Part shown: piece by piece, positions 9,232 to 50,221 of the stretch
How positions within the stretch are numbered: the first letter of the stretch is position 1
Layout of the letters: every line of letters begins with the position of its first letter
Source: Octopus bimaculoides
Taxonomy: Eukaryota
Reading direction: 5' to 3'
NCBI RefSeq assembly: GCF_001194135.2
Contig: NC_068981.1
Coordinates: forward strand, 163,029,888-163,093,887
Length of the DNA: 64,000 nucleotides
Program-made: the position numbers and the translations under genes
The notes under the pieces: generated by a model
Database searches by the model: none
Told to the model about the DNA's origin: nothing
Seen by the model: the letters and a program-made list of their open reading frames with translations, nothing else

Positions 9232-9339
9232 CTGTTGTATATGCAGGGAATCGTACATGCCACCAGTAGCTGAATTCGGTAGGACAGCGTCTGCGTTGTA
9301 GCCACCGGTCTGTGATATCACGTGTCGCAAAGCATTAAC
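9232..9339 (-). CDS. pbx: Pbx exon (PBX1 exon 8 equivalent); may extend to 9207 or read through to a stop at 9196
   Basis: ccttctgttttgtctgtag|GTTAAT...CAACAG|gtatca, 108 nt, phase 0 to phase 0: [36 protein letters not shown]. Compare PBX1a [14 protein letters not shown]. Confidence 0.93.
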
Positions 9340-10999
9340 CTACAGACAAAACAGAAGGATGCATTCATTCCAGTCAGCTACTTTAGTGATTCTATGCATC
9401 ATGCAATACAAGGGGGGGAGGAGGGGGAACCAGAGTTGAAGCAGCATTCTAGCCCATGGGATATTTGTTTGCATGGACACACAGACAAAAAAAAAAAAAA
9501 AAAAAAATTTTTTAAATCCCCAAATAAATTTTTATCACAGAATAATAAATTGGTAATTACATCATTGAGAGTCACAGTTGACCGAGACAAAAATGGCTGG
9601 CTGCACACATGTATAACTGTTATATAGCACTCCTGTTTTCATTTTCAATATTATAAAGTTTTAAATTTATCATAGATCTACATACAATCAAGTTTAGGCA
9701 TGGGCAATCTTTTGCGAGAAGTGGGCCACACTACTAGAAAAATCCAAAGTAATTCTTCATAAGGAATGCCACTCAGAAAGTCCAACGAGTTGCAGGATGC
9801 CCATGAATGATCTTATCACTGATGCTAGTAGAACACTAGTGCACAAAATAAACCCAAAGTGGATACAATAACATATTTGTATTGTAATTAGTTATTATGA
9901 TTCCTTCACAATGCAAGTGCTTCAGTTTCAATGCCTAATAATTGCAAATCAAGTAATTTGCTGAGTAAGCCAGAATACAACATTAAAATTATATTTGTAT
10001 ATTCAACTATTTATAGGACTAGGCCTACTATGTTTTTCAAACTGATCAACCACACAAAGTAACACATATAAATGGATTGATTTTTATGACTTGATAATTA
10101 TAGGTAAGGGAGATGAGACTGTGCGACAGTCCTGACATTAAGTGAAGTGATCTAGGCTTAACTGATAACTATTAAACTTGCGTTGTTGGACAGCTCAAAT
10201 GGAGTTTCTTTTGATCTTAGGCACAAGGCCACCACTTAAAGGTTGTGAAAACATATGAAGTTGATGTAATTCTAAACACACCTACATACACAAACGCACA
10301 TATATTTATTCTATAATTGTTGGTCCAACAAAAAAATATATATTCTGTTTAATTCTGGAACTAAGGAATAAAAGTTTAGGAAAAGCTAATTCATAATTTA
10401 ATTAAAATTTTCCCCAAATTTTTGTTCCTTAGTTCCAGATGAGCTGATTTAAATATTTTTTAGTCATTCTGTAAATGAAACTGGAAATCTGCAAACCAAC
10501 ACAGCTCTCAAAGAACAAGTAAGAACACAGTTACAAACCCAGTGAGCTAGAACAACTAACTAAATTGTCTTCAGCACCAGATTAATACTAATTCCACTGA
10601 GAGATAAACAGATAATAATAATCTATAATAATCATAATGCTAACTAAATTCAAATGAAAGGAGATATAATTCCAGTATAAAATTTATGAACCCATTTCTT
10701 ATAATTTGTGGGTTGGGATCCAGAAGTTAGACGTTACTTAAATATATAGAAAAGAGTAAAAACAAAACAAAAATATGGTCAAATCTATTCTAGCCAACTG
10801 TGAAAGTAAAACCATCATACTGAAATATTTACACACTGGTGTACACTAATGCATGGATCTATTACTATTATAATACATAAAATAACGGTCACGGGGTTTT
10901 AAAAAAAAAACAAAAAAAAAAACGTGTGTGCATGAGTGAATAAACAGTTAGTAGTAAGAACCTCTAGGGAGAATTCAGCAGTAGAAGGTCTTCAGAGAA

Positions 11000-11560
11000 G
11001 TAACCCCACACATTCAAGTGCTTTGGCCCTTAATTCCTTAAACTTTGAGGAAGGCAGGCTTCATCCAGGTCATGACCCCTGGATACCCATTTGCTGTCAC
11101 ATTTTATGATGATATCTGTATTGCAATCCTCCTGGACGGTTAAGGTGTGCTAGAGTCACAGTAGCCTGGGTGTCATAAGTGGTTCAGTCTGAGACACCAG
11201 TCAACAACTGTAGAGTAAATTTGTGCCTTCTAAAATACATTTTCTCTCTTCCTTAACCAGATTCAGTTGGAACTCATCTCAGCAGCTTCTGCCATTGCCT
11301 TAAGAGTTCTGGTTCTTTTTGTCTCAGAAATTGAGAGCTGTTTCATGAGATCATAGGCCAATTTGCCCTCAACTGTAGGCACATGGAAGAATAGCATAGA
11401 TGGGAGCAGTCACACATCTCCGTATGACTAATCCATGTTGTTGTGCTGTGTAGTCAGCCATGGTCTTCATTGATTATTGAATACTGAAATTCTTGGACAC
11501 AGACACCAGATCTTTCAGTGCAGAGTTCAAACACATTCCCAACAATAAAATAACACCACT
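11000..11560 (-). mobile_element. 3' end of a Hero/NeSL-like (R2 superfamily, RLE) retroelement relic
   Basis: Minus-strand 11400-11230 translates as LMKQLSISETKRTRTLKAMAEAAEMSSN*IWLRKRE. This resembles the EAAE.SS.W(I/L)W.KR C-terminus of Hero-type ORFs, with the TGA probably derived from TGG. Confidence 0.5.
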
Positions 11561-12280
11561 TTTGCATATTCAAGCATATGCAAGTTACAGCATATGTGGG
11601 AGATATTGAGAGTCACTAGTTACTTGCAAAGATGGCTACTACATTTTAATGCTATGAAAACATGGTTGTTTTTATCAATCAACAACGGACAAAGTGATAA
11701 TATTGAACATGCTTTAATTTTTTTTCACACATTTATCAATAAATTAATTATACTTATTCAGTATTTTTTAGGCCTTTGTGAAATTTAACAAGCGATTATA
11801 ATCTCTATCAAGATTATAAGAGTTCATTCATTAAATTTATTTTCTTTATATGTGAACAGTTCACACACACATTCACATACAAATTTTAAGTAGTAGAAAA
11901 TATGAATTAGAATCAAGTGGTGTCAACTGCAAGCTCCCCATTCAGAATTGGCTATCAGTTTACATACAACTCAATTATCATGTAGTGTAATGCAATATGT
12001 CCATATAACTGAAAATGCAGGAAATCCAAACATATGCATACATATATACTGTAAAGTCAGAGTTGTAAAGAATGTTGAAATATATATTACATAGTACCAA
12101 CATTATCTTGTATACAACTAAATAGTGTTTATCAGAAATCATGAACAACCCTGCCGAGGCCAAAAAACTTACTCAGCAACCATGTGCTTTTAGGTTCAGT
12201 CCCATGACGCAGTACCATGACAACTGTTTTCTACTATAGGTTAAGGTTGATCAAGGCCTTGTAAGTGACTATGGTAGGAG

Positions 12281-48532: not shown

Positions 48533-48900
48533 GGTGCAGGAGTGGCTGTGTGGTAAGGAGTTTGTTAACCAACCACATGGTTCTGGGTTCAGTCCCACTG
48601 CGTGGCACCTTGGGCGAGTGTCTTCTACTATAGCCTCAGGCCGACCAAAGCCTTGTGAGTAGATTTCGTAGATGGAAACTGAAAGAAGCCTGTCATGTAT
48701 GTGTGTGTGTGTGTTTGTGTGTCCGTGTTTGTCCCCCCGCCATCGCTTGACAACCAATGCTGGTGTGTTTACGTCCCCGTAACCTAGCGGTTCGGCAAAA
48801 GAGACCGATAGAATAAGTGCTAGGCTTACAAAGAATAAGTCTTGGGGTTGATTTGCTCGACTAAAGGCTGTGCTCCAGCATGGCCGCATGAAACAAGTAA
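48533..48900 (+). mobile_element. Near full-length tRNA-derived SINE (family B here)
   Basis: The head has pol III A-box-like (gagtggctgtgtggtaag) and B-box-like (ggttcagtccc) motifs, followed by a central (TG)n and the 3' end gctccagcatggccgca...gaaacaagtaa. There are many copies in the window. Confidence 0.9.
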
Positions 48901-50073
48901 CAGAATCCTTCTAGCTCCTTTCTAGACACTTGAAACATTTACATGACAAACATCAAATGATCACCAAAAGTACACATTCTTGTTAATAAGACAAAAAACA
49001 CAGGAAACAAAACACATCCTTGCAGTACAACAAGAAAGCCAACCTTTCTCTTCAAGCTATTGGCCACTAAGTACCTGGAAATACCAGCCAATGCCTTGCT
49101 GGCTTATGCACAATTGCTGCAGGGTATATAACCTGGCAGCCGTGCTTATCACACAATCTCACATGTAACTTCATGCTACCAAATTGTTTACTTTTCCAAA
49201 TGATATACCCAGCAGAATGCCAACTAACTGATGCCAACATGGAGCAAGTAATGAAAGAACTGATGTTACTAGATAGTTAAAACACCCATTGTGATCTGAA
49301 CTGACCATGGAAAGCCTAAATATTCTAACCTTGAAACCGTTTAAAATTTCTTTTAAAATTTCTCTCCATTCTGATGATGCTGCCATGTTTTGTACCCAAG
49401 AAATTTTATGTGGAGCCAATTCAACTGGCTATTAAACACACACATACACCAAACAAGGGTTCTTCCTTAGCATGAAATGAAGCCTGGAACCACTGTGTGT
49501 TACACAACAACTTATAATTAGAAAAAGAAAAAAAACTAAACAAAGACCCTATTTTTTGTGACACCAAGTGTAACTTTCATGACTAGCCCTTGTGTATGTA
49601 ACAGCCAATGTGTGTATCTCTACAATGGAATATATCAACATGTAGAAGGCACACAAATAGTAGTAGATATCTTCATTATCAAACAATACAGAATGGATTA
49701 AGGAGCTGAATTTGTGTATGAGTGGAGAAACAAGAATGAAAGCATGAGCTACTGTAGAGATAATACTTTAGACAAAAAAAAAAACAAAACAAAAAAAAAC
49801 ACACATCTCTACATGGTTTCTTAATCTGCTAAAAATAGCACTAATCTCCCTCAAATCACACTTTACAAAAAGACACTTTGGATAATGTCCTGGAAGAGAC
49901 AGTATGCTTTTGATTATATAGGTTTGTCTGATTAGGGTTGTCCAAGGGCTAAACAACAACACTGAACTATGAGAAACAAAAAAAAGAAAGCGACAAAAAA
50001 AAAAATAAAATAAAGCAAAAAGTCAATATCGAGATGTCACATGCAGAAGAAACTAGTAAACACAGACACTGAC

Positions 50074-50221
50074 CTTGTGCTGCACCGCCATCGTGACCTG
50101 ATACTGCTTGCTGTGCTGCTGCAGCTGCTGCTGTTTTAGCTGCATATAAATTTGCTTCTTCCTGCGCTTTACCAATATTTTTTTTATACCGAATTCGTTT
50201 ATTTCCAAACCAGTTCGATAC
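50074..50221 (-). CDS. pbx: Pbx/extradenticle exon (PBX1 exon 6 equivalent): end of the TALE homeodomain plus C-terminal helix and poly-Ala tract
   Basis: Minus strand reads ttttcgctgcag|GTATCG...GCACAAG|gtcagt. The 148 nt (phase 0 to phase 1) translate to [49 protein letters not shown](G). [15 protein letters not shown] is diagnostic of the PBC class, and [12 protein letters not shown] is the protostome Exd-type variant. Confidence 0.97.

What the first reader, a model, noticed from the sequence alone, without database searches (positions are those of the whole stretch)
9232..50221. Invertebrate Pbx with a vertebrate-type long C-terminus and a built-in PBXa/PBXb frameshift switch
Seen in the sequence: three exons with phases 0-1, 1-0 and 0-0 encode [30 protein letters not shown]. 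The middle exon is 134 or 125 nt (length mod 3 = 2). Skipping it joins ...CAA G to GT TAA and gives ...GGAAQG*. From knowledge: vertebrate PBX1b arises by skipping the equivalent frame-shifting exon 7, and Drosophila Exd lacks this C-terminal tail. Inference: the a/b isoform switch may be ancestral to bilaterians and kept in a mollusc. Here the short form stops at once, and because that stop is over 100 nt upstream of a later junction it could be an NMD target.
Basis: partly seen in the sequence, partly recalled or inferred. Interest (0 to 1): 0.78.

Follow-up and report, generated by a model that had tools for sequence, protein, structure and literature searches.

The report
Octopus Pbx gene tail exons
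This is the 3' end of the already annotated Octopus bimaculoides Pbx homeobox gene; its vertebrate-like tail exons are real, but RNA data show no skipping of the frame-shifting exon, and the short protein form is made instead by splicing to a different last exon that opens with a stop codon.

Summary
On the minus strand lie Pbx exon 6 (50221-50074), exon 7 (36640 or 36631 to 36507; 134 or 125 nt) and exon 8 (9339-9232), with phases 0-1, 1-0 and 0-0. Joining exon 6 to exon 8 gives ...GGAAQG*. All four flagged gaps are intronic, and RNA contigs join exon 7 to exon 8 exactly.

The gene is Octopus bimaculoides Pbx. RefSeq already lists isoforms X1 (413 aa), X2 (410 aa, 9-nt alternative acceptor) and X3 (377 aa, exon 8 skipped). 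The same tail occurs in a bivalve, spiders and a horseshoe crab, so it is not a novelty.

The proposed exon 7 skipping switch is not supported. In seven RNA runs, exon 6 continues only into the 125-nt form of exon 7, and the contigs do not branch there. They branch after exon 7, into three forms:
- exon 8 followed by a VPPQSL... tail exon that is absent from the window's letters;
- that tail exon directly;
- a last exon starting at 2911 with TAA as its first codon, giving ...VGANVQSQ*.

The third form appears in four runs and two octopus species, and I did not find it annotated. Rare or NMD-degraded exon 7 skipping is not excluded. Overall, an ordinary gene with a modestly interesting extra isoform.

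The parts
50074..50221 (-). Pbx exon 6: end of the homeodomain (helix 3, [11 protein letters not shown]) plus an Ala-rich linker. 148 nt, phases 0->1.
   Evidence: RNA contigs of X1, X3, X4, X9, X11, X26 and X27 cover it and are spliced at both ends.
36507..36631 (-). Pbx exon 7, the 125-nt form used in all RNA contigs examined (GYNMVASS...[20 protein letters not shown]). Phases 1->0, strong sites (tttttttttcag..., CAG|gtgagt). It behaves as a constitutive exon.
36632..36640 (-). 9-nt extension of exon 7 from the upstream alternative acceptor (the 134-nt form). It adds VSG, as in RefSeq isoform X1 versus X2.
   Evidence: Sequence; proteins. Not seen in any contig laid.
9232..9339 (-). Pbx exon 8: an in-frame 108-nt cassette exon ([36 protein letters not shown]), included in a minority of transcripts.
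   Evidence: Junction 36507->9339 in X4, X25 and X26, and the 9232 donor joined to the VPPQSL exon in X4. Absent from the contigs of eight other runs. Skipped in RefSeq isoform X3. About 2 raw reads in X47 against 32 on exon 6.
9335..9337 (-). TAA that would come into frame only if exon 6 were joined to exon 8.
   Evidence: arithmetic. No such junction.
2265..2911 (-). Alternative last exon. Acceptor cttcttgcag|TAACTGCTT; the first codon, TAA (2911-2909), is in frame after exon 7, so the protein ends ...VGANVQSQ*. The rest is 3' UTR. AATAAA lies at 2332, 2325 and 2143. The 3' end is not mapped; contigs reach about 2265.
   Evidence: Exon 7 is its only upstream partner in X9, X26 and X47 (3 raw junction reads). 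The 1616-nt X1 contig carries this exon together with exon 7, exon 6 and upstream exons. At least 13 O. bimaculoides RNA runs hold the exon.
4496..5277 (.). Assembly gap of 782 N. It is one possible hiding place of the missing long-tail coding exon (VPPQSLGGGRTSQSG...KRAKI), which is in transcripts and RefSeq proteins but not in the window's letters.
   Evidence: no match in the window; the exon exists in RNA and protein. Its location is inference only.

Best explanation
The window holds the 3' part of the single Pbx (PBC-class TALE homeobox) gene of Octopus bimaculoides, on the minus strand. The gene is very large: 382 kb in O. sinensis.

Shown:
- Exons 6, 7 and 8 are real and homologous to vertebrate PBX exons 6-8.
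- Exon 7 is constitutively included, through its 125-nt acceptor.
- C-terminal diversity arises downstream of exon 7, where the 36507 donor is joined to one of three acceptors.
  (i) Exon 8 (9339), and from there the long-tail exon VPPQSLGGGRT...KRAKI. This is the full-length form, RefSeq X1/X2.
  (ii) The long-tail exon directly. This is the form without exon 8, as in RefSeq X3.
  (iii) An alternative last exon at 2911 whose first codon is TAA. The protein keeps the PBC domain, the homeodomain and the exon 7 peptide, but loses the [11 protein letters not shown] motif and the acidic tail.
- The mix differs between samples. X1 shows only (iii), X3 and X11 show only (ii), and X9 shows both (ii) and (iii).

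Inferred:
- The choice is a competition between splice acceptors, probably coupled to the choice of poly(A) site.
- Because its stop lies in the last exon, the short mRNA should escape NMD.
- By analogy with PBX1a and PBX1b, the long and short proteins probably differ in cofactor recruitment rather than in DNA or Hox/Meis binding.
- The frame-shifting length of exon 7 is an inherited structural feature, not a switch that octopus visibly uses.
For: Identity:
- P0127 (O. bimaculoides XP_014777406.1, isoform X1) is 100% identical to the exon 7 + 8 peptide.
- The exon 8 peptide matches O. bimaculoides rather than O. sinensis.
- P0127 carries the Pfam PBC, Homeobox_KN and Homeodomain domains.

Exon 7 is constitutive:
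- A single contig runs from exon 6 into exon 7 in X1, X3, X9, X11 and in X26, X27, X4.
- In X4, X9, X26 and X27 these contigs stop at or within 2 nt of the end of exon 7.

Branching after exon 7:
- Loose ends at 36505/36507 show two continuations. One maps to 2882-2911.
- The other, ACCTCCCCAATCCC..., equals the VPPQSLGGG of the RefSeq proteins and is absent from the window.
- Exon 8 is flanked by the end of exon 7 and by the VPPQ exon in X4.

The 2911 exon:
- Its only upstream partner is exon 7 in X9, X26 and the raw reads of X47.
- Contig depths in X9 are 98 for exons 6-7, against 61 for the long form and 30 for the short form.
- In X26 the 7->2911 junction has depth 110 and the 7->8 junction 20.
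- At least 13 RNA runs from four studies hold the exon.
- The reading frames are confirmed.
Against: - Contig depth is a poor measure of abundance, and contigs drop rare variants.
- Only about 6% of the one raw-read run was read: 32 reads on exon 6, 11 on the 2911 exon and 2 on exon 8.
- The raw-read loose ends at the 3' end of exon 6 were not printed, so a low level of exon 7 skipping is untested.
- The long-tail exon could not be placed in the window. Whether the 2911 exon lies upstream or downstream of it is therefore unknown, which leaves open alternative last exon within an intron versus skipping to a distal exon.
- The 3' end of the short mRNA is not mapped.
- X27 is inconsistent between tools: the index says it holds the 2911 exon, but no contig was laid there.
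- Tissue identities of the runs are coded, so regulation is inferred only from differences between runs.
- No functional data exist for either protein form.
Confidence: 0.8

Rival explanations
1. Exon 7 is a regulated cassette whose skipping shifts the frame and yields a PBX1b-like short protein (...GGAAQG*), a switch inherited from the bilaterian ancestor.
For: - Exon 7 has a length of 2 mod 3 with phases 1->0 in octopus and in the bivalve Tegillarca, where it is 128 nt. From knowledge, the same holds in vertebrate PBX1, where skipping exon 7 shifts the frame and places a stop in exon 8 (PMC4755740).
- Skipping gives an early stop in octopus.
- In Tegillarca it would give a 14-residue frame-shifted tail (G-ECVEACHFADWWLQ*). 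That tail ends at the codon position where, from memory, human PBX1b ends.
Against: - No exon 6->8 junction, and no branch at the exon 6 donor, in the contigs of seven RNA runs, although minor branches after exon 7 are resolved in the same data.
- Exon 7 has near-consensus splice sites.
- RefSeq isoform sets of two octopus species lack such a form.
- The exact product is not on record.
- Octopus makes its short form in another way.
Confidence: 0.06
2. Exon 7 skipping occurs only as low-level unproductive splicing. The transcript with the premature TAA (103 nt upstream of the exon 8 donor) is removed by NMD, so it serves at most to tune Pbx dosage and is invisible in steady-state RNA.
For: - The stop position relative to the confirmed 9232 donor fits the 50-55 nt rule known from vertebrates.
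- Contigs cannot exclude rare forms.
- The raw-read loose ends at this site were not displayed.
Against: - No positive evidence at all.
- Exon 8 itself is included in only a minority of transcripts, so most skipped transcripts would not even carry this stop. The 6->tail join reads ...QGTSPIPWRWPN and the 6->2911 join reads an 80-residue junk frame.
- Whether molluscan NMD depends on exon junctions is not established (from knowledge).
Confidence: 0.1
3. The exon 7->2911 junction is splicing noise, or an assembly or scaffolding artefact, and not a real Pbx isoform.
For: - The 3' end is unmapped.
- An A-rich stretch at about 2367-2356 could cause internal priming.
- The window has gaps on both sides of this exon (1610-1804 and 4496-5277).
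- The form is not among RefSeq X1-X3 nor in the protein collection.
Against: - The same exact junction is found in four runs, two species labels and independent studies, including three raw junction reads.
- Its depth is comparable to that of the constitutive exons (30 of 98 in X9; 110 of 112 in X26).
- One 1616-nt contig in X1 links it to exons 7 and 6 and about 770 nt of upstream sequence.
- It has a good acceptor with a pyrimidine tract, and AATAAA signals.
- At least 13 RNA runs hold the exon.
Confidence: 0.05

Closest known systems
[quoted passage not shown]
   Same: Identical protein over exons 6-8. X1 and X2 differ by the 9-nt acceptor choice in exon 7, and X3 lacks the 36 residues of exon 8.
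   Different: None of the three ends at ...VGANVQSQ, so the exon 7->2911 form is not among them. None skips exon 7. The models start at MKPALF, which suggests a truncated N-terminus.
Vertebrate PBX1a/PBX1b switch: PTBP1-repressed exon 7 whose skipping shifts the frame and places a stop in exon 8 (Linares et al. 2015, PMC4755740)
   Same: Homologous exons and intron positions (VQSQ|V), and a middle exon of 2 mod 3. Both genes produce a long and a short C-terminal form with the same PBC domain and homeodomain.
   Different: In octopus exon 7 is kept. The short form arises after exon 7 through an alternative last exon with an immediate stop, so it retains the exon 7 peptide and adds no frame-shifted residues. 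A hypothetical skip would stop at once instead of after about 14 residues.
Protostome PBC proteins carrying the same tail: Tegillarca granosa KUTeg_022159, Limulus XP_022236202.1, and spiders (Trichonephila PRD35662.1, Caerostris GIX70626.1)
   Same: The motif NG(G)DSYQ...GANVQSQ[VA]NALRHVI[ST]QT[GA]GY...MY is conserved. Tegillarca has the same exon phases.
   Different: The sequences after exon 8 are unrelated (VLHSPPS* in arcid bivalves, a long acidic tail in octopus). Bivalves also have a tandem pair of exon 6 copies that the octopus window lacks.
Drosophila and insect Extradenticle
   Same: The same PBC domain, homeodomain and exon 6 peptide; the bee protein shows weak similarity over the start of exon 7 (GINGSDYG).
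   Different: The GANVQSQ and [11 protein letters not shown] motifs are absent from the insect sequences retrieved, which fits a secondary loss in insects.
Variable 3' ends of the partner TALE gene Meis/hth (Irimia et al. 2011, PMC3140891)
   Same: A conserved 5' part encoding the interaction domain and homeobox, and an evolutionarily flexible, alternatively spliced 3' part encoding regulatory C-termini.
   Different: A different gene family; no sequence relation between the tails.

Membership tests
PBC-class TALE homeobox gene (Pbx/Exd) | Homeodomain helix 3 with the PBC signature [11 protein letters not shown] (Gly at homeodomain position 50) | tested here: met
   Exon 6 encodes [26 protein letters not shown]. 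Pfam Homeodomain and Homeobox_KN are found on the full protein P0127.
PBC-class TALE homeobox gene (Pbx/Exd) | PBC domain (PBC-A/B) N-terminal to the homeodomain | tested here: met
   It lies outside the window, upstream of 64000. The RefSeq protein identical to the window's exons has Pfam PBC at E = 4e-69, and the O. sinensis gene model carries PF03792.
Vertebrate-type long PBX C-terminus (exons 7-8) | Conserved motifs [16 protein letters not shown] and V[ND][12 protein letters not shown], split by a phase-0 intron after VQSQ | tested here: met
   The junction is confirmed by RNA.
PBX a/b exon 7 skipping switch | The middle exon has a length not divisible by 3 and is flanked by phases 1 and 0 | tested here: met
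   125 or 134 nt in octopus; 128 nt in Tegillarca.
PBX a/b exon 7 skipping switch | Transcripts that join exon 6 directly to exon 8 | tested here: not met
   No such contig or branch in seven RNA runs. Absent from the RefSeq isoforms. The product is not on record. Sensitivity is limited to forms above roughly a tenth of transcripts; the raw-read evidence is inconclusive.
PBX a/b exon 7 skipping switch | The skipped mRNA is stable (escapes NMD) and makes a short protein | not testable with these tools
   It needs NMD inhibition and protein detection. The predicted stop is 103 nt upstream of a confirmed junction.
Alternative last exon giving a C-terminally truncated isoform | A splice junction from a shared upstream exon to a distinct terminal exon, seen in RNA | tested here: met
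   36507->2911 in X1, X9, X26 and X47.
Alternative last exon giving a C-terminally truncated isoform | Its own polyadenylation signal and a mapped mRNA 3' end | tested here: inconclusive
   AATAAA at 2332, 2325 and 2143. Contigs end at about 2340 and 2265. No poly(A) reads were examined.
Alternative last exon giving a C-terminally truncated isoform | Mutually exclusive with the other C-terminal exons | tested here: met
   The only upstream partner of 2911 is exon 7. No exon 8->2911 or tail->2911 junction is seen in X9, X26 or X47.

The most novel reading that the evidence does not exclude
Making a long and a short C-terminal form of PBC proteins may be an old, functionally required feature of bilaterian Pbx genes that different lineages implement differently. 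Vertebrates would do it by skipping exon 7, octopus by splicing exon 7 to a stop-first last exon, and bivalves possibly by reading through the exon 6 or exon 8 donor. On this reading, the octopus ...VGANVQSQ* form is a regulated, cephalopod-conserved counterpart of PBX1b that has so far escaped annotation.
Probability: 0.2. Interest if true: 0.5.

Novelty: new variant of a known kind. Interest (0 to 1): 0.3.

Why it matters
PBX1a and PBX1b differ in activity during vertebrate neuronal differentiation (PMC4755740), and how old that isoform logic is remains unaddressed.

This case shows three things:
- The exon architecture that permits the vertebrate frameshift (a middle exon of 2 mod 3, and the intron after VQSQ) is shared by molluscs. 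The encoded tail is also found in chelicerates. The architecture therefore predates the split of protostomes and deuterostomes.
- Insects, the usual invertebrate reference, appear to have lost the tail.
- An octopus nevertheless truncates Pbx by another route.

They also give a concrete, testable isoform pair for Hox-cofactor studies in cephalopods. For annotation, they flag an apparently missing isoform and a coding exon hidden by an assembly gap. None of this changes the view of what the gene is, so the wider importance is modest.

Tried and rejected
- Laying on 8700-9450 was swamped by low-complexity matches at 8890-8940.
- The long-tail exon was searched for in the window by exact words, with 3 mismatches, and by tblastn. 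It is absent.
- The O. sinensis locus could not be fetched because the gene spans 382 kb.
- The word-indexed protein search with the tail alone found only 8 candidates. The exhaustive HMMER search was needed to find the octopus protein.
- I first thought the bivalve transcript P0029 (...GQGSDGLYQDYDDDVL*) was an in-frame multi-exon skip to an acidic last exon. Its DNA shows it is read-through of the exon 6 donor (CAAG|GTAGTG), so I rejected that idea.
- I first read X27 as lacking the 2911 exon. The index says it holds it, so I make no claim about that run.
- I considered read-through of the exon 8 donor (HIQQVSSPYTPQGHV*) as the true end. It is seen only in one low-depth contig (X25, depth 3.7), while X4 shows the donor in use.
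- Literature searches found no paper on invertebrate Pbx C-terminal isoforms. Mukherjee & Burglin 2007 is not held.
- Pfam found nothing on the intronic ORFs, and Rfam found nothing in the window.

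
Full report
**1. What is in the sequence**

- Exon 6 (50221-50074, 148 nt) starts after ctgcag and ends AAG|gtcagt. It encodes [50 protein letters not shown], with one base left over.
- Exon 7 ends at 36507 (CAG|gtgagt). It has two acceptors 9 nt apart, at 36640 and 36631, giving 134 or 125 nt, both 2 mod 3. It encodes (VSG)[41 protein letters not shown].
- Exon 8 (9339-9232, 108 nt, phases 0-0) encodes [36 protein letters not shown].

Joining exon 6 to exon 8 reads ...CAA G|GT TAA, that is ...GGAAQG*. 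The rest of the gene, the PBC domain and most of the homeodomain, lies beyond position 64000.

**2. The gaps**

The four flagged gaps (20842-20851, 21566-21575, 29050-29059, 30499-30665) all lie within the 27-kb intron between exons 7 and 8. RNA contigs of three runs join 36507 directly to 9339. Exon order, orientation and frame are therefore confirmed independently of the assembly.

Two further gaps (1610-1804 and 4496-5277) lie downstream of exon 8. They matter for section 5.

**3. Whose gene it is, and whether the tail is new**

An exhaustive HMMER search with the exon 7 + 8 peptide found one protein that is 100% identical (P0127). [quoted passage not shown] The exon 8 peptide matches O. 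bimaculoides and differs from O. sinensis at three residues. P0127 carries the Pfam PBC, Homeobox_KN and Homeodomain domains.

RefSeq already lists three isoforms in each of the two species:
- X1, 413 aa;
- X2, 410 aa, without VSG, which corresponds to the 125-nt acceptor;
- X3, 377 aa, without the 36 residues of exon 8.

The tail is not peculiar to octopus. The bivalve Tegillarca granosa has ...[35 protein letters not shown].... Limulus and spiders have ...NGGDSYQ..MGANVQSQANALRHVI[ST]QT[GA]GY.... A tick and a scorpion have the exon 7 motif. The insect Exd sequences retrieved lack both motifs.

In the Tegillarca locus, exon 7 is 128 nt (phases 1->0) and exon 8 is 96 nt (0->0), with the intron after VQSQ at the same place.

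The tail is, however, already present in public annotation. I found no paper that discusses it. The most likely source, Mukherjee & Burglin 2007, is not held.

**4. Is exon 7 skipped?**

I found no evidence that it is.

- In the contigs of seven RNA runs (X1, X3, X9, X11; X26, X27, X4), the 3' end of exon 6 continues into one sequence only: exon 7 from the 36631 acceptor. The contig passes the junction without a break.
- The same assemblies do break at the end of exon 7. They resolve alternative continuations there even at low depth: 20 against 110 in X26, and 3.7 in X25. A skipped form above roughly a tenth of transcripts should have shown up.
- Exon 7 has near-consensus splice sites.
- No RefSeq isoform skips it.
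- The exact predicted product is not in the 15-billion-protein collection.

The limits are these. Contigs drop rare variants. Only about 6% of the one raw-read run was read, giving 32 reads on exon 6. The loose ends of those reads at the exon 6 donor were not printed. Rare or NMD-degraded skipping is therefore not excluded.

The TAA would lie 103 nt upstream of the 9232 donor, and that donor is confirmed by X4. But exon 8 is itself a minority exon. Most skipped transcripts would therefore read other frames...QGTSPIPWRWPN... into the tail exon, or about 80 junk residues into the 2911 exon.

**5. What really varies**

After exon 7 the RNA shows three continuations.

(a) Exon 8, then an exon beginning GTACCTCCCCAATCCCTTGGAGGTGGC, which is VPPQSLGGG (X4).

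(b) That same exon directly, in X3, X11 and X9. This is the X3-type protein.

(c) A sequence that maps to 2911-2882. The acceptor there is cttcttgcag|TAACTGCTT, so the first codon is an in-frame TAA and the protein ends ...VGANVQSQ*.

Form (c) has good support:
- It appears in X1 and X9 (species label A) and in X26 and the raw reads of X47 (label B, the window's species; 3 junction reads). Exon 7 is the only upstream partner of 2911.
- The 1616-nt X1 contig links this exon to exons 7 and 6 and to upstream exons.
- At least 13 RNA runs from four studies hold the exon.
- AATAAA signals lie at 2332, 2325 and 2143. The 3' end itself is not mapped.

Rough proportions are as follows.

| Run | Measure | Values |
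|---|---|---|
| X9 | contig depth | 98 for exons 6-7, 61 for form (b), 30 for form (c) |
| X26 | contig depth | 110 for junction (c), 20 for the 7->8 junction |
| X47 | raw reads | 32 on exon 6, 11 on the 2911 exon, 2 on exon 8 |

X1 shows only (c). X3 and X11 show only (b). The balance therefore differs between samples, but the run identities are coded and contig depth is a poor measure.

Form (c) is not among RefSeq X1-X3, and its exact sequence is not on record.

The long-tail exon (74 residues, VPPQSL...KRAKI) is not in the window's letters. It may be hidden in the 782-N gap at 4496-5277 or the 195-N gap at 1610-1804, or it may lie beyond position 1. I could not decide which, because the O. 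sinensis locus is too long to fetch.

**6. How it most likely works**

Shown: one donor (36507) is paired with three acceptors. The resulting proteins share the PBC domain, the homeodomain and the exon 7 peptide. They differ in whether they have the [11 protein letters not shown] exon and the acidic tail.

Inferred:
- The short form results from competition between acceptors, coupled to poly(A) site choice.
- Because its stop sits in the last exon, the short mRNA should be stable.
- By analogy with PBX1a and PBX1b, the forms probably differ in cofactor recruitment. PBX1a/b isoform-specific activity is shown in PMC4755740. The isoform-specific corepressor binding reported for the PBX1a C-terminus is from my memory of Asahara et al. 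1999 and is not checked here.

This works like the vertebrate a/b pair in outcome but is not the same event. The defining junction of the vertebrate switch was tested and not found.

**7. Verdict**

The tail and its ancient exon structure stand. The exon 7 switch, its ancestry and its novelty do not.

The gene and three of its isoforms are already annotated. The added value is an apparently unannotated short isoform made through a stop-first alternative last exon, plus a note that a coding exon is missing from this assembly stretch. Interest is modest.

Noticed in passing
L001 (Tegillarca granosa CM056606.1) 10759-10891 and 10945-11077: There are two tandem copies of Pbx exon 6: [26 protein letters not shown]... 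and [26 protein letters not shown]... Both are 133 nt (1 mod 3) and only 53 nt apart, the layout of mutually exclusive exons for the end of the homeodomain. A Logan contig protein (P0003) shows the same pair, and P0163 uses the 'NIVKAQEEANMY' type with a different tail. The octopus window has only one copy.
   Followed up: partly
P0002 / P0166 (bivalve transcripts); equivalent to window 36530-36507: Some bivalve mRNAs lack the eight residues VGxNVQSQ and join ...DNS directly to VNALRH. This suggests an internal donor (TCG|GTTGGG-like) inside exon 7. The octopus has the same G|GTTGGG sequence at that place, but no contig uses it.
   Followed up: no
L002 (Logan SRR18313975 contig) 610-659: A bivalve Pbx transcript that is otherwise spliced reads through the exon 6 donor (CAAG|GTAGTG) and ends ...GQGSDGLYQDYDDDVL*. 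This is either intron retention or an intronic-polyadenylation short form. The cluster that holds it has 11 member sequences.
   Followed up: partly
L001 1-3482 and 10001-15801: The Tegillarca annotation splits one Pbx gene into two models: a 293-residue N-terminal model with the PBC domain and homeodomain, and the 139-residue KUTeg_022159 tail model with an invented start. It also reads through the exon 8 donor (HIQQ|VLHSPPS*).
   Followed up: partly
window 8890-8940: A low-complexity tract (Leu/Gln-like trinucleotide runs) attracts thousands of unrelated RNA contigs at very high depth. Any read laying across it is uninformative.
   Followed up: no
window 2760-2975, run X27: The word index reports that X27 holds all sampled words of 2420-2911, yet no X27 contig was laid on 2760-2975. 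This discrepancy between the tools is unexplained.
   Followed up: no
window 9231-9197: Read-through of the exon 8 donor would add VSSPYTPQGHV*, faintly like vertebrate ...MYSPQGI.... One low-depth contig (X25, depth 3.7) runs through the donor, probably unspliced RNA.
   Followed up: partly
P0106 (EukProt entry labelled GoldUCD, Seg2217.2): This entry is probably a cnidarian Pbx, but the species is inferred from the label, from memory, and not verified. It shows NGSEYSGSNAVGINVQSQ followed by an acidic stretch (GSDEDDDTENGE) reminiscent of the octopus tail (EEDEDDSDGYDTPTDE). That hints the exon 7 motif and an acidic end may predate Bilateria.
   Followed up: no
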